This document shows positions 46,931 to 49,861 of a DNA stretch of 64,000 nucleotides, piece by piece. A program made the position numbers and the translations under genes. The notes below the pieces were generated by a model. That model searched no databases and had not been told where the DNA came from. It worked only from the letters and a program-made list of their open reading frames with translations. Source of the stretch: Salpingoeca rosetta (taxonomy: Eukaryota > Protista > Choanoflagellata); contig JAWQFM010000005.1 in the NCBI GenBank assembly GCA_033442325.1, forward strand, positions 2,138,313 through 2,202,312. Direction: 5' to 3'. How positions within the stretch are numbered: position 1 is the stretch's first letter; every line of letters starts with the position of its first letter.

Positions 46931-49861
46931 ATGCTGGCTCTTGCGTTGGTGGCCATTAGCTTCATTGGCTTCATCGTTCTCCGATGGTGCCTGCGCCATG
47001 GCGTGTGGATCCCATTCGGCAACGGGTGGGTGCAACACTGTTGGTCATCTACCTGACACTGTTGCTGCTGCTGTGCGACTGCTGCTGCATTGCGTCCCTC
47101 CCTGCGGTGTTCGTATCCAGCGGCTTGCTTTGCCTCTCTTTCCTTGGCACCCGCCTTGAAGAGTCACACATGGCTCACTCTTGTCCCATTTCCTCCACAC
47201 ACACACACACACACACACACACACACACACACACACACACACACACACACACACACACACACACACACACACACACACCACACACACACACACACACACA
47301 CACACACACACACACACACACACACACACGCACGCACGCACAACAGGACGTGGGTGCGCCGGTGGTATGCGCCCGTGAAGGAGTCGGATGAGACACTGCA
47401 GCAGCTGCAGACAAACCTGCAGACGGTGTGCAAGGACTCCATCGACACTGTGCTCGACTACCCCGTGCTCATGGCAAAGACATGCGAAGAGCTGCGCAAA
47501 GAGCTGCACAACAAGGTCATCCTGGAAATTTACTGCCAGAAGCAGCGCAAGGTCGTTGGCTTCCACATGGCCTTCTGGTCCCGCCTCAACGTGCACCTCG
47601 GCCTGGTCATGATTGCCAAGTCCGCCCAGAAGCGTGGCCTGCAGAAGCTCTCCCTGTTCAACATTTGCATGCTCATGTTTGACTGGTTTGCCTACCGCTT
47701 CCGCATCAGCGACATTGGCTACTCGTCCTCCGCTTTCAGGTGCGTGTATGTGTGTGCGTGCGTGTGTGTGTGCGTGTGTGTGCGTGTGCGTGTGTGCTGC
47801 ATTGTCTCTGGGATTGGTGTCGGCGCTCCACGTACACTGTTGATGTCTCTACATGCCTCTCCTCACCCTCACCCCCATTCTCTTCACTCCACCACCGCTG
47901 CCTCCCCTCCCACCCCAAACGCTCGCTTTCATACGGTCAGGCTGTTCTCGTACACCATCAACAAGTCCTATCCCAACCTGTACTTTGACGTCAAGCCTGA
48001 GAAGTGGCACTACGATATTGCAAAGGTGTGGTGGACCACGACGCTTGCTACTTCTTTGATGTACCTTGCGTGCGCATGTGTGCGTGTGCGTGTGCGTGTG
48101 CGTGCGTGTGTGTGTGTGCGCGTGTGTGTGCGTGTGTGTGTGTGTGTGTGTGTGTGTACAAGGTATGCTGAGCGGCATCTGGTCTTGATTCCACTTCTTG
48201 TTTCCGCAGTTCTCATCTCCCCGCTCACCACCCCCTCTCCCCCCCCCCAAAACACAACACAAAACGCCAACCAACTCCATGTTTTTGCAGGAGCTGCTTG
48301 CCAAGCACCGCCGGGACATGGGCGTGAGCGCAGAGGCCACGTTTGACCCCGTGCACTTTGTTGTCAAGGGCTCGAACAAGGCTGCCGGCGGCGGCGCCAA
48401 CGCGCTGGTGCAGCACGTGGTGACGCGCAAGTCGCGCATGGGCGTGGCTGCGCAGTATCTGGACGACCTGCTGCAGCCCGAGGACGAGCAGCTGTACATT
48501 GGCGACGGCGACATCTTTGTCTTCCTCTACCGCATGCTCCCTGTCGTGCCCATGGTCTCCACATACGTCCGATACCTCATCATGTTTGCCATCTTCGCCG
48601 TGCACAACTACCTCTACGCCAACGCGTCGTGGTATGCCTCCACCGCCCTCAAGCTCATGCGCTTCCGCCACCACATCCGCGGCGCCGTGCCGCCCACGGA
48701 CAAGCCCGCGCTGTGGGTGTGCAACCACTACTCGTACCTCGACGCGCTGCTCATCCACGCTGCCGTCCCCGGCGTGCGCATCATCGCCAAGAAGGATCTT
48801 GCCGACGAGATGCCCAAGGGCATGCTGCGCGACTTTATGTTCCGCGTGTGGTGCCGCGGCGGGTTCATGTGGTACGACCGCCAGAGCAAGGACGCCACCA
48901 TCCGCGAGCGCATTGCAGAGGCCTTCAGGCAGGGCCAGTCTGTGGTTGTGTTCAGCGAGGGCACGTCCAAGCGATCTGGCCCGCCGGGCGAGATGCGGCC
49001 AGGTGCCGTCAAGATTGCCGCAGACAACGGCGTGCCCATCATCCCCGTCGCCCTCAGGTGCGCCGCTCTCCTGGCGTGATGTGTGATGTGTGGTGTGGTG
49101 TGTGGTGTGTGGTGTGGCGTAGAACGCGTGCATCATGTCGTTTTTGTTTTTGTTGTGGTGTTGTTTTGTCGTGCGCATGCTTCGGTTTTGTATGGAGTAT
49201 TCGTTCAGTGCCGCGTGTTGATTTTGCGTGATTGTTGGCAAGCAAGCCAGCACAACACAACACAAGACAACACAAGACAACACAAGACAACACACCACAA
49301 CACAACACACCACAACACAACGCAACACAACACAACACTCAACCTCTCCTTCCTCACCCATCGCCCCTCTCCACCCCTGTTTCCTCCCGCTTCACCCCAA
49401 TTACCAGGTACTCGTTCCCGATTGGCGTGGCCAAGGGCGACAACGCGATCCGCAACATCATGTCGATTCTGCCCATGCGCGGCATTCGCTGCGGTATCCG
49501 TTTTGGCCAGCCCATCCAGCACCCAAAGGACATTGACCAAGTCCGGTACGAGCACTCTTCCCCGATAAGTGGTGGTGCTGTGTGTGTGTGTGTGTGTGTG
49601 TGTGTGTGTGTGCGTGTGTGCGTGTTGTGTGTGTGCGCGCGCGTGTTGTGTGTGTGATTGGTATGAGGAAATGCGTGACCGGTGCTCTTGCTGTGTGGTT
49701 GTGCGATTCTCCAAACTCATCACCTTCCTCTCCTGCCCCTCCCCCCTCCCTCCTACATCCCAATCCGTCCCTGTGGTGTGTGCAGCGGGCGCGTGACGGA
49801 GCTGTGGCGGGAGCTTGCCGACGACATGGTCTACCCCGTCCTCGAGAGCGCCGCCGTCTGA
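46931..49861 (+). CDS. Two-domain acyltransferase, 517 aa: N-terminal TM + GNAT-like domain fused to a PlsC/LPLAT glycerolipid acyltransferase domain
   Basis: Exons 46931-47025, 47347-47739, 47941-48025, 48291-49057, 49408-49545, 49786-49861 (1554 nt). PlsC motifs CNHYSYLD, IIAKK, FSEGT, PIIPVAL. GNAT motif-A-like VHLGLVMIAKSAQKRGLQ. Confidence 0.8.

What the first reader, a model, noticed from the sequence alone, without database searches (positions are those of the whole stretch)
46931..49861. GNAT-like + PlsC fusion: candidate bifunctional N-/O-acyltransferase for aminolipid synthesis in a choanoflagellate
Seen: the C-terminal ~200 aa are a clear PlsC-type acyltransferase (NHYSYLD, FSEGT). 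The preceding ~270 aa form a separate domain with GNAT acyl-CoA motif-A-like HLGLVMIAKSAQKRGL and the segment HRRDMGVSAEATFDPVHFVV, which recalls a mainly bacterial uncharacterised family. The junction lies within exon 4. Established: bacterial ornithine and glutamine lipids are made by a GNAT N-acyltransferase (OlsB/GlsB) plus a PlsC-like O-acyltransferase (OlsA), fused in OlsF in the opposite domain order. Inference: this is a eukaryotic, possibly horizontally acquired enzyme making phosphorus-free amino- or sulfono-lipids, notable because lipids are developmental cues in S. rosetta. It is the best candidate here for an undescribed pathway.
Basis: partly seen in the sequence, partly recalled or inferred. 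Interest (0 to 1): 0.7.

Follow-up and report, generated by a model that had tools for sequence, protein, structure and literature searches.

The report
GNAT-fold plus PlsC fused acyltransferase gene
This is a real six-exon gene for a membrane-anchored enzyme that joins a previously unnamed GNAT-type acyltransferase domain to a standard PlsC lipid acyltransferase; the same pairing occurs in giant algal viruses and tiny algae, so it probably makes or remodels a lipid that nobody has yet identified.

Summary
Window 46931-49861 (+) holds a six-exon, all GT-AG, single-copy gene of 517 codons. It encodes an N-terminal membrane anchor, a ~260-aa domain with no Pfam family, a hydrophobic hairpin and a PF01553 PlsC domain (E 2.6e-21) with all four motifs.

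The GNAT idea holds. AlphaFold models of two full-length relatives match only GNATs for the N-domain (Z up to 12.2) and T. maritima PlsC for the C-domain.

New here:
- The N-domain is an unannotated family. It is fused to PlsC in the window's closest relatives, in picoalga-like eukaryotes and in prasinovirus-like giant viruses.
- It is split but directly adjacent to a PlsC gene in AT-rich, virus-like contigs.
- It stands alone in 5 of 401 sampled Pseudomonadota, never beside plsC there.

It is not a member of the OlsB/OlsF/GlsB family (PF13444), nor an OlsA equivalog. The aminolipid-synthase reading is therefore an analogy, plausible but unproven. Recent bacterial transfer is not supported, since the gene is intron-rich and shared within its clade.

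Exons were searched separately and never joined.

The parts
46931..47025 (+). Exon 1: start codon and N-terminal hydrophobic membrane anchor (MLALALVAISFIGFIVL...)
   Evidence: Kyte-Doolittle 19-aa windows up to 2.3. Aligns with the N-termini of P0003, P0032 and P0027.
47347..47739 (+). Exon 2: first half of the GNAT-fold domain (strand 1 to strand 5)
   Evidence: An exhaustive phmmer search finds only family members. Aligns to model strands and helices of the P0004 proxy. GNAT fold matches.
47594..47641 (+). HLGLVMIAKSAQKRGL: strand 4 plus the motif-A-like pyrophosphate loop (Q-x-x-G-x-Q instead of Q/R-x-x-G-x-G/A)
   Evidence: H-L-G-L-V is invariant from bacteria to eukaryotes. It lies at strand 90-98, loop and helix 109-122 of the model.
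47941..48025 (+). Exon 3: YPNLY segment of the insertion between helix 4 and the last strands of the GNAT fold
   Evidence: Aligns with the family; the P of YPN/FPSP is invariant.
48291..48506 (+). Exon 4, first part: C-terminal third of the GNAT-fold domain (HRRDMGVS...FVVKGSN..GGG...DEQLYIG)
   Evidence: Profile match in G000 at E 1.5e-32. Shared with the bacterial family (HRAAFGVG..FDE.RFVIT..GG).
48513..48602 (+). Hydrophobic segment between the domains. Stand-alone N-domain proteins end here and the neighbouring stand-alone PlsC begins here.
   Evidence: KD windows of 1.6-1.7. Helices 304-337 of the full-length model. The alignment with L003 PlsC starts at exon-4 residue 70.
48693..49052 (+). 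PF01553 PlsC/AGPAT acyltransferase core: NHYSYLD (48723-48743), GGFMWYDR, FSEGT (48951-48965), VPIIPV
   Evidence: Pfam E 2.6e-21. TIGR00530 E 6.7e-21. 5kym E 1.2e-5 by sequence.
49408..49545 (+). Exon 5: continuation of the acyltransferase fold (YSFPIGVAKGD...)
   Evidence: Colinear with P0032, P0004 and P0027. Modelled with strands and helices.
49786..49861 (+). Exon 6: C-terminal helix and stop codon (49859-49861)
   Evidence: Matches the P0031 C-terminus REKVTDLWRELASDMVYPV. Frame checked.

Best explanation
The gene encodes a membrane-anchored, two-domain acyltransferase. An N-terminal anchor helix holds a GNAT-fold domain of a family that has no name yet. A hydrophobic helical hairpin follows, and then a complete PlsC/AGPAT-type acyltransferase. 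The most likely working is that both domains are catalytic and act one after the other on the same lipid at the membrane surface. The GNAT domain would transfer an acyl group from an acyl thioester to an amine (an amino acid, amino-sulfonate or lipid head-group amine). The PlsC domain, through its His-Asp dyad (NHYSYLD), would esterify a free hydroxyl of a lyso-type lipid. This is the logic of OlsB+OlsA or OlsF, reached with a different, non-orthologous N-acyltransferase family. What is shown: the gene structure, both folds, intact PlsC motifs, and the recurrent fusion or adjacency of the two modules. What is inferred: catalytic competence of the GNAT domain, that the two steps are coupled, and the nature of the product.
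For: - Gene model and motifs.
- PlsC domain: PF01553 at E 2.6e-21. 5kym is the only PDB sequence hit and the best fold hit of the full-length relative P0032 (E 1.6e-8).
- GNAT fold, model of P0004:36-312 (pLDDT 83, pTM 0.79): 217 Foldseek hits at E<=1e-3, top 50 all GNAT-type acetyltransferases. The 50 VIA rows listed are all GNAT-fold proteins, Z 9.3-12.2, and 114 chains reach Z>=8. PF00583 scores 19.6 bits against a cut-off of 20.7 on P0004.
- Functional link of the two modules: they are fused in three lineages. In L003/L004/L005 they are separate genes lying tail to tail without a spacer, and that PlsC aligns with exon 4 from exactly the junction onward (E 7e-18).
- A single origin of the fusion is not rejected (AU p 0.17).
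- The gene is single copy, and the genome has at least four other PF01553 loci, so this need not be the housekeeping LPAAT.
- In the virus contigs it lies two genes from a patatin phospholipase.
Against:
- The GNAT motif A is only partly canonical (QKRGLQ), and its central Gly is His in the viral copies.
- The domain does not match PF13444, which all known aminolipid N-acyltransferases share (PMC11631085).
- Bacterial homologues are not next to plsC or any recognisable lipid gene. They pair instead with a 7TM/GAF-like membrane protein.
- GNAT folds can be non-catalytic.
- The structural evidence rests on relatives (48-64% identical to the window's exons), not on the window's own joined protein.
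- Aminolipids are stated to be absent from eukaryotes (PMC12971839).
Confidence: 0.45

Rival explanations
1. It is an ordinary lysophospholipid or lysophosphatidate acyltransferase for membrane remodelling. The GNAT-fold domain would be a non-catalytic accessory that binds acyl-CoA, regulates the PlsC domain or positions it on the membrane.
For: The PlsC domain is complete and generic: the best NCBIfam hit is 1-acylglycerol-3-phosphate acyltransferase and one source names a viral homologue that way. Motif A is degenerate in some members. A patatin phospholipase sits nearby in the viruses, which fits a deacylation-reacylation cycle.
Against: The N-domain also exists as a stand-alone, membrane-anchored protein in bacteria and virus-like contigs, with strongly conserved strand-4/loop residues (H-L-G-L-V invariant). 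That pattern suggests an activity of its own. The score lies below the TIGR00530 cut-off (74 against 103). EGTS replaces EGTR in motif III, a change that from my own knowledge is common in enzymes whose acceptor is not a phosphomonoester.
Confidence: 0.3
2. The two domains do chemically unrelated jobs. The GNAT domain would acetylate or acylate a protein or small molecule at the membrane, independent of the lipid acylation by the PlsC domain.
For: The closest solved folds are protein N-terminal and small-molecule acetyltransferases (RimI, NatD, Naa50, AAC). The bacterial homologues sit in non-lipid contexts: ThiF, TetR, a second GNAT, amidohydrolases.
Against: Repeated fusion or tight adjacency with one particular PlsC subfamily across distant hosts and viruses argues for a shared pathway. 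Fold neighbours within the GNAT superfamily are poor guides to substrate.
Confidence: 0.15
3. The gene is a recent bacterial transfer or assembly contaminant rather than a resident eukaryotic gene.
For: A bacterial family homologous to the N-domain exists. The distribution among eukaryotes is patchy.
Against: It has five GT-AG introns filled with the (CA)n/(GT)n repeats typical of this window, and a GC content like its surroundings. It lies beside an intron-bearing DIM1-like gene. It forms a clade (99/99) with six related eukaryotic sequences, separated from the bacteria by a very long branch. No bacterial protein carries the fusion.
Confidence: 0.02

Closest known systems
OlsF, the bifunctional ornithine/lysine lipid synthase of Serratia, Flavobacterium and Vibrio
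   Same: One polypeptide combines a GNAT-superfamily N-acyltransferase-type domain with an O-acyltransferase domain. The proposed logic is the same: an amide bond, then an ester bond.
   Different: The domain order is reversed. The OlsF N-acyltransferase is PF13444 and its O-acyltransferase is PF19576 (PMC11631085). Here the N-domain matches no Pfam family and the O-acyltransferase is PF01553. Any resemblance is therefore analogy, not orthology. No eukaryotic or viral OlsF is known (PMC12971839).
OlsB + OlsA (also GluB/GlsB + OlsA-like, and SalA), the two-gene aminolipid pathways
   Same: A GNAT-superfamily enzyme is paired with a PF01553 PlsC-like enzyme, encoded side by side. The split form in L003-L005 mimics this arrangement.
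   Different: The N-domain is not PF13444. The PlsC part scores 42 bits against the OlsA equivalog cut-off of 300. The split genes are convergent, not co-directional.
Thermotoga maritima PlsC (PDB 5kym) and the AGPAT/LPLAT family
   Same: HX4D, FxxR-like, EGT and PxxP motifs are present. It is the best fold and sequence match of the C-terminal half, and it shares a hydrophobic two-helix membrane-binding element ahead of the catalytic core.
   Different: The window's protein carries a ~290-aa N-terminal extension (anchor plus GNAT fold). Motif III reads EGTS rather than EGTR. It scores below the TIGR00530 cut-off.
Unnamed bacterial 'hypothetical protein' family of ~300-340 aa, mainly Pseudomonadota (ESM Atlas clusters of 594 and 1374 members)
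   Same: It is homologous over the whole N-domain (profile E to 2e-30; TM 0.84-0.85 over 258-268 residues). It shares the HLGLVMV, FPxP, HR..FGV...FD...FV and GG motifs and a C-terminal hydrophobic helix.
   Different: It stands alone and is never fused to or next to PF01553 in the five genomes seen. It is paired with a ~400-aa multi-pass membrane protein.
N-acyl amino acid synthases and AHL synthases (FeeM, NasY, LasI), GNAT-fold enzymes that use long acyl donors
   Same: They share the GNAT superfamily fold and use an acyl donor to form an amide with an amino compound, which is the activity proposed here.
   Different: None appeared among the 50 rows listed by either fold search. There is no detectable sequence similarity.

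Membership tests
PlsC/AGPAT acyltransferases (Pfam PF01553) | Profile score above the curated cut-off | tested here: met
   76.2 bits against a cut-off of 23, E 2.6e-21, exon-4 residues 135-254.
PlsC/AGPAT acyltransferases (Pfam PF01553) | Motif I NHxxxxD (catalytic His-Asp), motif II FxxR-like, motif III EGT, motif IV hydrophobic-P-x-x-P | tested here: met
   NHYSYLD, GGFMWYDR, FSEGTS and VPIIPVAL are read directly in exon 4 and conserved across the family. The motif definitions come from my own knowledge of the family.
PlsC/AGPAT acyltransferases (Pfam PF01553) | AGPAT fold | tested here: met
   The model of relative P0032 (56-64% identical to the window's exons 2-5) matches 5kym at E 1.6e-8, then PatA, GPAT1 and LpxM. 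This was tested on the relative, not on the window's joined protein.
1-acylglycerol-3-phosphate O-acyltransferase subfamily (TIGR00530) | Score above the NCBIfam cut-off | tested here: not met
   74.4 bits against a cut-off of 102.95.
OlsA lyso-ornithine lipid O-acyltransferase (NF052553 / NF052552 equivalogs) | Score above the equivalog cut-off | tested here: not met
   42.2 and 25.6 bits against a cut-off of 300.
GNAT superfamily | Mixed alpha/beta GNAT fold with a strand-4/helix-3 CoA-binding unit | tested here: met
   The P0004:36-312 model has pLDDT 83. All 50 VIA rows listed are GNAT-fold proteins, Z up to 12.2 with 135-172 aligned residues, and 217 Foldseek hits have E<=1e-3. This was tested on a relative 48% identical in exon 2.
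GNAT superfamily | Motif A Q/R-x-x-G-x-G/A | tested here: inconclusive
   The window has Q-K-R-G-L-Q. The last position is Q or S across the family, and the central G is H in viral copies.
GNAT superfamily | Significant match to a GNAT Pfam model | tested here: inconclusive
   The window's exons give no hit. P0004 scores 19.6 bits against a cut-off of 20.7 for PF00583. One of ten members reaches E 4.5e-4. Yeast GNA1 scores E 0.03 with profile A2 but nothing with the deeper profile A6.
Aminolipid N-acyltransferases OlsB / GluB / GlsB / OlsF C-terminal domain | PF13444 (Acetyltransf_5) domain, shared by all of them according to PMC11631085 | tested here: not met
   There is no PF13444 hit for the window's exons at E<=1, nor for any of ten family members at E<=10. 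NCBIfam is also empty for exon 2 and for the bacterial homologues.
OlsF bifunctional synthase | N-terminal PF19576 O-acyltransferase followed by C-terminal PF13444 N-acyltransferase | tested here: not met
   The order here is GNAT-fold domain first and PF01553 second, and neither OlsF Pfam family is hit.
Aminolipid synthases in general | Makes an N-acyl (acyloxyacyl) amino acid lipid | not testable with these tools
   This needs expression and lipid mass spectrometry.

The most novel reading that the evidence does not exclude
The GNAT-PlsC fusion is the first eukaryotic and giant-virus synthase of an acyloxyacyl amino- or sulfono-lipid (or another N-acylated, phosphorus-poor lipid). It would have been invented independently of OlsBA/OlsF from an unnamed GNAT family and moved between protists by prasinovirus-like and mimivirus-like viruses, which would use it, with patatin, to rebuild host membranes during infection.
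Probability: 0.2. Interest if true: 0.85.

Novelty: new variant of a known kind. Interest (0 to 1): 0.6.

Why it matters
Aminolipids of the ornithine-lipid type are currently described as strictly bacterial (PMC12971839), and every known N-acyltransferase that makes them belongs to one Pfam family (PMC11631085). Here a different, unannotated GNAT-fold family is welded to, or encoded beside, a dedicated PlsC-type acyltransferase. The pairing occurs in the window's lineage, in picoalga-like eukaryotes and in two kinds of giant-virus-like contigs.

If both domains are active, this defines a new two-step lipid acylation module in eukaryotes and their viruses. That would bear on marine lipid budgets, virus-driven membrane remodelling, and the lipid chemistry of the closest unicellular relatives of animals.

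Even if the product proves ordinary, three results stand:
- The family gives a name and a fold to a conserved domain with no annotation.
- A gene is shared between giant viruses and their probable hosts.
- The work exposes a conserved bacterial two-gene module of unknown function.

The test is direct: express the gene, knock it out, and run lipidomics.

Tried and rejected
- Word-index searches with exon 2 alone found nothing. Exon-4 residues 1-125 found only two close exon fragments. The length window of that tool hides the full-length kin.
- Single-protein scans with P0022 and with the L003 854-aa protein in IMG/VR, and with P0023 in genome contigs, found no relatives.
- Two low-ranked phmmer hits, P0024 (NACHT-LRR) and P0017, are spurious repeat matches.
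- The PDB profile search with the deeper alignment A6 gave no hit at E<=1. The earlier weak GNA1 hit is therefore only a hint.
- I tested whether bacterial homologues sit beside plsC: none does in five genomes.
- I looked for the family in 301 genomes of the phylum of an Ilumatobacteraceae genome (Actinomycetota by my own knowledge) and in 301 of the phylum of a Chryseobacterium genome (Bacteroidota by my own knowledge). It was not found in those searched.
- I tried to name the bacterial partner protein: no Pfam or NCBIfam family, only a 7TM/GAF-like lead.
- Literature searches for a GNAT-PlsC fusion, or for a virus-encoded version, found no description.
- The recent-contaminant or recent-HGT reading was rejected on introns, repeats, composition and phylogeny.
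Full report
**Scope and method limits.** I followed that: the exons were never joined into one protein for any search, fold or script. Where a contiguous protein was needed I used full-length relatives returned by the database tools. 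These were P0004 (544 aa) and P0032 (567 aa, a transcript-derived complete ORF). Their identities to the window's exons are 48-57% (P0004, exons 2-4) and 52-64% (P0032, exons 1-5).

**1. The observation.** The region 46931-49861 on the plus strand holds a six-exon gene.
- The exons are 46931-47025, 47347-47739, 47941-48025, 48291-49057, 49408-49545 and 49786-49861.
- Every intron is GT-AG. The exons sum to 1554 nt (517 codons plus stop) and stay in frame.
- Four of the five introns carry long (CA)n/(GT)n-type runs, as do other non-coding stretches of the window. GC content is like the flanks.
- The model is colinear across every junction with intron-free relatives.
- The start codon is confirmed by alignment of exon 1 with the N-termini of P0003, P0032 and P0027.
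- The gene is single copy: a profile of the N-domain hits only these exons in the 55.4-Mb assembly.
- The assembly has at least four other PF01553 loci.

**2. The C-terminal half.**
- PF01553 matches exon-4 residues 135-254 at E 2.6e-21.
- TIGR00530 matches at E 6.7e-21 but below its cut-off. The OlsA equivalogs score far below theirs.
- The only solved structure found by sequence is T. maritima PlsC, 5kym.
- 5kym is also the best fold match of the full-length P0032 model (pLDDT 82, pTM 0.72; E 1.6e-8 over 258 columns). PatA, GPAT1, plant GPAT and LpxM follow.
- Motifs I-IV are intact: NHYSYLD, GGFMWYDR, FSEGTS and VPIIPV.
- Motif III reads EGTS, not EGTR. From my own knowledge of the family, that change is commoner in enzymes whose acceptor is not a phosphomonoester. 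This is a hint only.

**3. The N-terminal domain.**
- The pieces of the domain give no Pfam or NCBIfam family.
- An exhaustive phmmer search of 1.84 billion representatives with exon 2 gave only 24 hits. Two of them, checked against Pfam, are repeat artefacts.
- The true hits define a small family. Fused proteins of 498-602 aa have the same architecture. Stand-alone proteins of 250-291 aa end exactly where the hydrophobic linker begins.
- An AlphaFold model of P0004:36-312 with the family alignment is confident (pLDDT 83, pTM 0.79).
- Foldseek against the PDB returns 217 hits at E<=1e-3, and the top 50 are all GNAT-type acetyltransferases.
- The Foldseek-independent search gives 114 chains at Z>=8. 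All 50 rows listed are GNAT-fold proteins, with Z 9.3-12.2 and 135-172 aligned residues spanning model residues 6-248.
- The whole ~260-aa domain is therefore one GNAT fold with about 100 residues of insertions.
- Sequence-level support is marginal. PF00583 scores 19.6 bits against a cut-off of 20.7 on P0004. GNA1 scores E 0.03 with one profile and nothing with a deeper one.
- HLGLVMI is strand 4, and QKRGLQ sits in the pyrophosphate loop before helix 3. The match to motif A is only partial.

**4. Where else the N-domain occurs.**
- The ESM Atlas shape search found bacterial 'hypothetical protein' clusters of 594 and 1374 members, mostly Pseudomonadota. They match at TM 0.84-0.85 over 258-268 residues.
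- A profile of the family found homologues in 5 of 401 evenly sampled Pseudomonadota genomes (E 1e-24 to 2e-30, ORFs of about 296-317 aa).
- It found none in 301 genomes of each of two other phyla.
- The alignment shows shared HLGLVMV, FPxP, HR..FGV...FD...FV, GG and D...G motifs.
- The PF01553 genes of those five genomes all lie far away.
- The conserved bacterial neighbour is a ~400-aa protein with 8-10 hydrophobic segments and no family assignment. Its only lead is a 7TM-sensor/GAF-like resemblance.

**5. The fusion and its split form.**
- P0027 and P0018 are intron-free fusions of 516-517 aa. They lie on contigs with Pox_VLTF3, PCNA, RNase III, SWIB, PBCV-type P8/P9/P11 capsid proteins and many DUF57xx families. 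I read these as prasinovirus-like members of the Phycodnaviridae.
- An 85%-identical copy lies on an IMG/VR viral contig.
- In those contigs the local gene order is conserved: DUF5760, the fusion, an unnamed ORF, DUF3339, then patatin.
- P0019 and P0025 lie on compact GC-rich contigs with eukaryotic genes such as cytochrome heme lyase and PARP.
- The stand-alone P0022 lies on very AT-rich (18-27% GC), densely coded contigs with DUF5872. It sits directly tail to tail, without a spacer, against a 248-aa PF01553 gene.
- That PlsC aligns with exon 4 from residue 70 onward, exactly the junction, at E 7e-18.
- That these AT-rich contigs are giant-virus DNA is an inference from composition, gene density and the DUF family. 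IMG/VR held no close relative.
- The two modules therefore recur together, fused or adjacent, in distant settings. This is the best evidence that they work in one pathway.

**6. Phylogeny (N-domain, 20 rows, bacteria as outgroup).**
- The bacterial clade is separated from all eukaryotic and viral sequences by a very long branch.
- The window's exon 2 groups with P0031 (78% identity) and P0032, and with P0004/P0029/P0030, in one clade (99/99).
- The viral fusions nest inside the two alga-like sequences (98/97). This fits capture of a host gene by the virus.
- The stand-alone forms sit on long branches of uncertain position.
- Monophyly of all fused forms is not rejected (AU p 0.17), so one fusion event suffices.
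- The gene is thus old in the window's lineage. The patchy spread across eukaryotes and viruses suggests ancient transfer, perhaps by giant viruses, but the direction is not resolved.
- I could not verify organism names.

**7. Comparison with known systems.**
- According to PMC11631085, all aminolipid N-acyltransferases (OlsB, GluB, GlsB, the OlsF C-terminus) share PF13444.
- The same paper places OlsA and SalA in PF01553, and the OlsF O-acyltransferase in PF19576.
- The window's N-domain does not match PF13444, and its PlsC domain is not an OlsA equivalog.
- It is therefore not a member of the Ols families. At most it works like them.
- PMC12971839 states that such lipids have been found only in bacteria.
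- The literature searches found no description of this fusion. That covers only the held library.

**8. Verdict.**
- The architecture is certain: membrane anchor, GNAT fold, hydrophobic hairpin, PlsC.
- I judge coupling of the two domains in one lipid pathway likely, at about 0.6.
- I give the full best explanation, both domains catalytic and acting in sequence, 0.45, and a specific aminolipid or sulfonolipid product about 0.2.
- The main rival, at 0.3, is a plain lysophospholipid acyltransferase with an accessory GNAT-fold domain.
- It is a new variant of a known kind: known folds in an undescribed combination, with an unannotated N-domain family and a notable giant-virus connection.

Noticed in passing
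L138:7278-8480 (-), L139:10452-11642 (+), L141:8144-9409 (-), L140:10150-11595 (+), L142:10163-11608 (+): In all five bacterial genomes the N-domain homologue is followed closely downstream (immediately in four genomes, after one intervening ThiF-like gene in L138) by a ~400-aa protein with 8-10 hydrophobic segments and a soluble C-terminal domain. The motifs E..LRRHAP, RD...L...EN and DF are invariant. It has no Pfam or NCBIfam family; the only lead is a 7TM-sensor/GAF-like resemblance. This is an unnamed conserved two-gene module.
   Followed up: partly
L006:5592-8700, L007:1799-4907, L008:546-3657: Prasinovirus-like contigs keep the order DUF5760, GNAT-PlsC fusion, an unnamed ~120-aa ORF, DUF3339, patatin-like phospholipase. 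This may be a viral lipid-remodelling cluster.
   Followed up: partly
L003:6001-7536 (also L004, L005): Very AT-rich (18-27% GC) metagenome contigs carry the split form. The N-domain gene and a PF01553 gene are convergent with no spacer, beside an ELP3-like radical SAM gene, an Fe-S biogenesis gene and DUF5872. They are probably giant-virus DNA, but this is not proven.
   Followed up: partly
L138:6157-9340 (-) and L138:10443-11051 (+): In one bacterium the N-domain homologue sits in a cluster with a ThiF-like adenylyltransferase, a second 374-aa GNAT protein and a divergent TetR regulator. PspA/IM30 lies close by in L139 and L140.
   Followed up: no
window 45802-46386 (-): The first coding exon of a DIM1/KsgA-like rRNA adenine dimethylase (GQHILKNP...[11 protein letters not shown]) is transcribed divergently from the acyltransferase gene. 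I identified it by eye from the ORF translation.
   Followed up: no
window 47187-47345, 47745-47800, 48075-48160, 49575-49660: Long (CA)n/(GT)n-type microsatellites fill introns 1, 2, 3 and 5. They create the many spurious Cys/Val- and His/Thr-rich ORFs seen in six-frame listings.
   Followed up: no
G000:C28:217797-218102, C7:61083-61565, C8:1252213-1252827, C8:1067208-1067336: At least four further PF01553 acyltransferase loci exist in the same genome, so canonical glycerolipid acyltransferases are probably encoded elsewhere.
   Followed up: no
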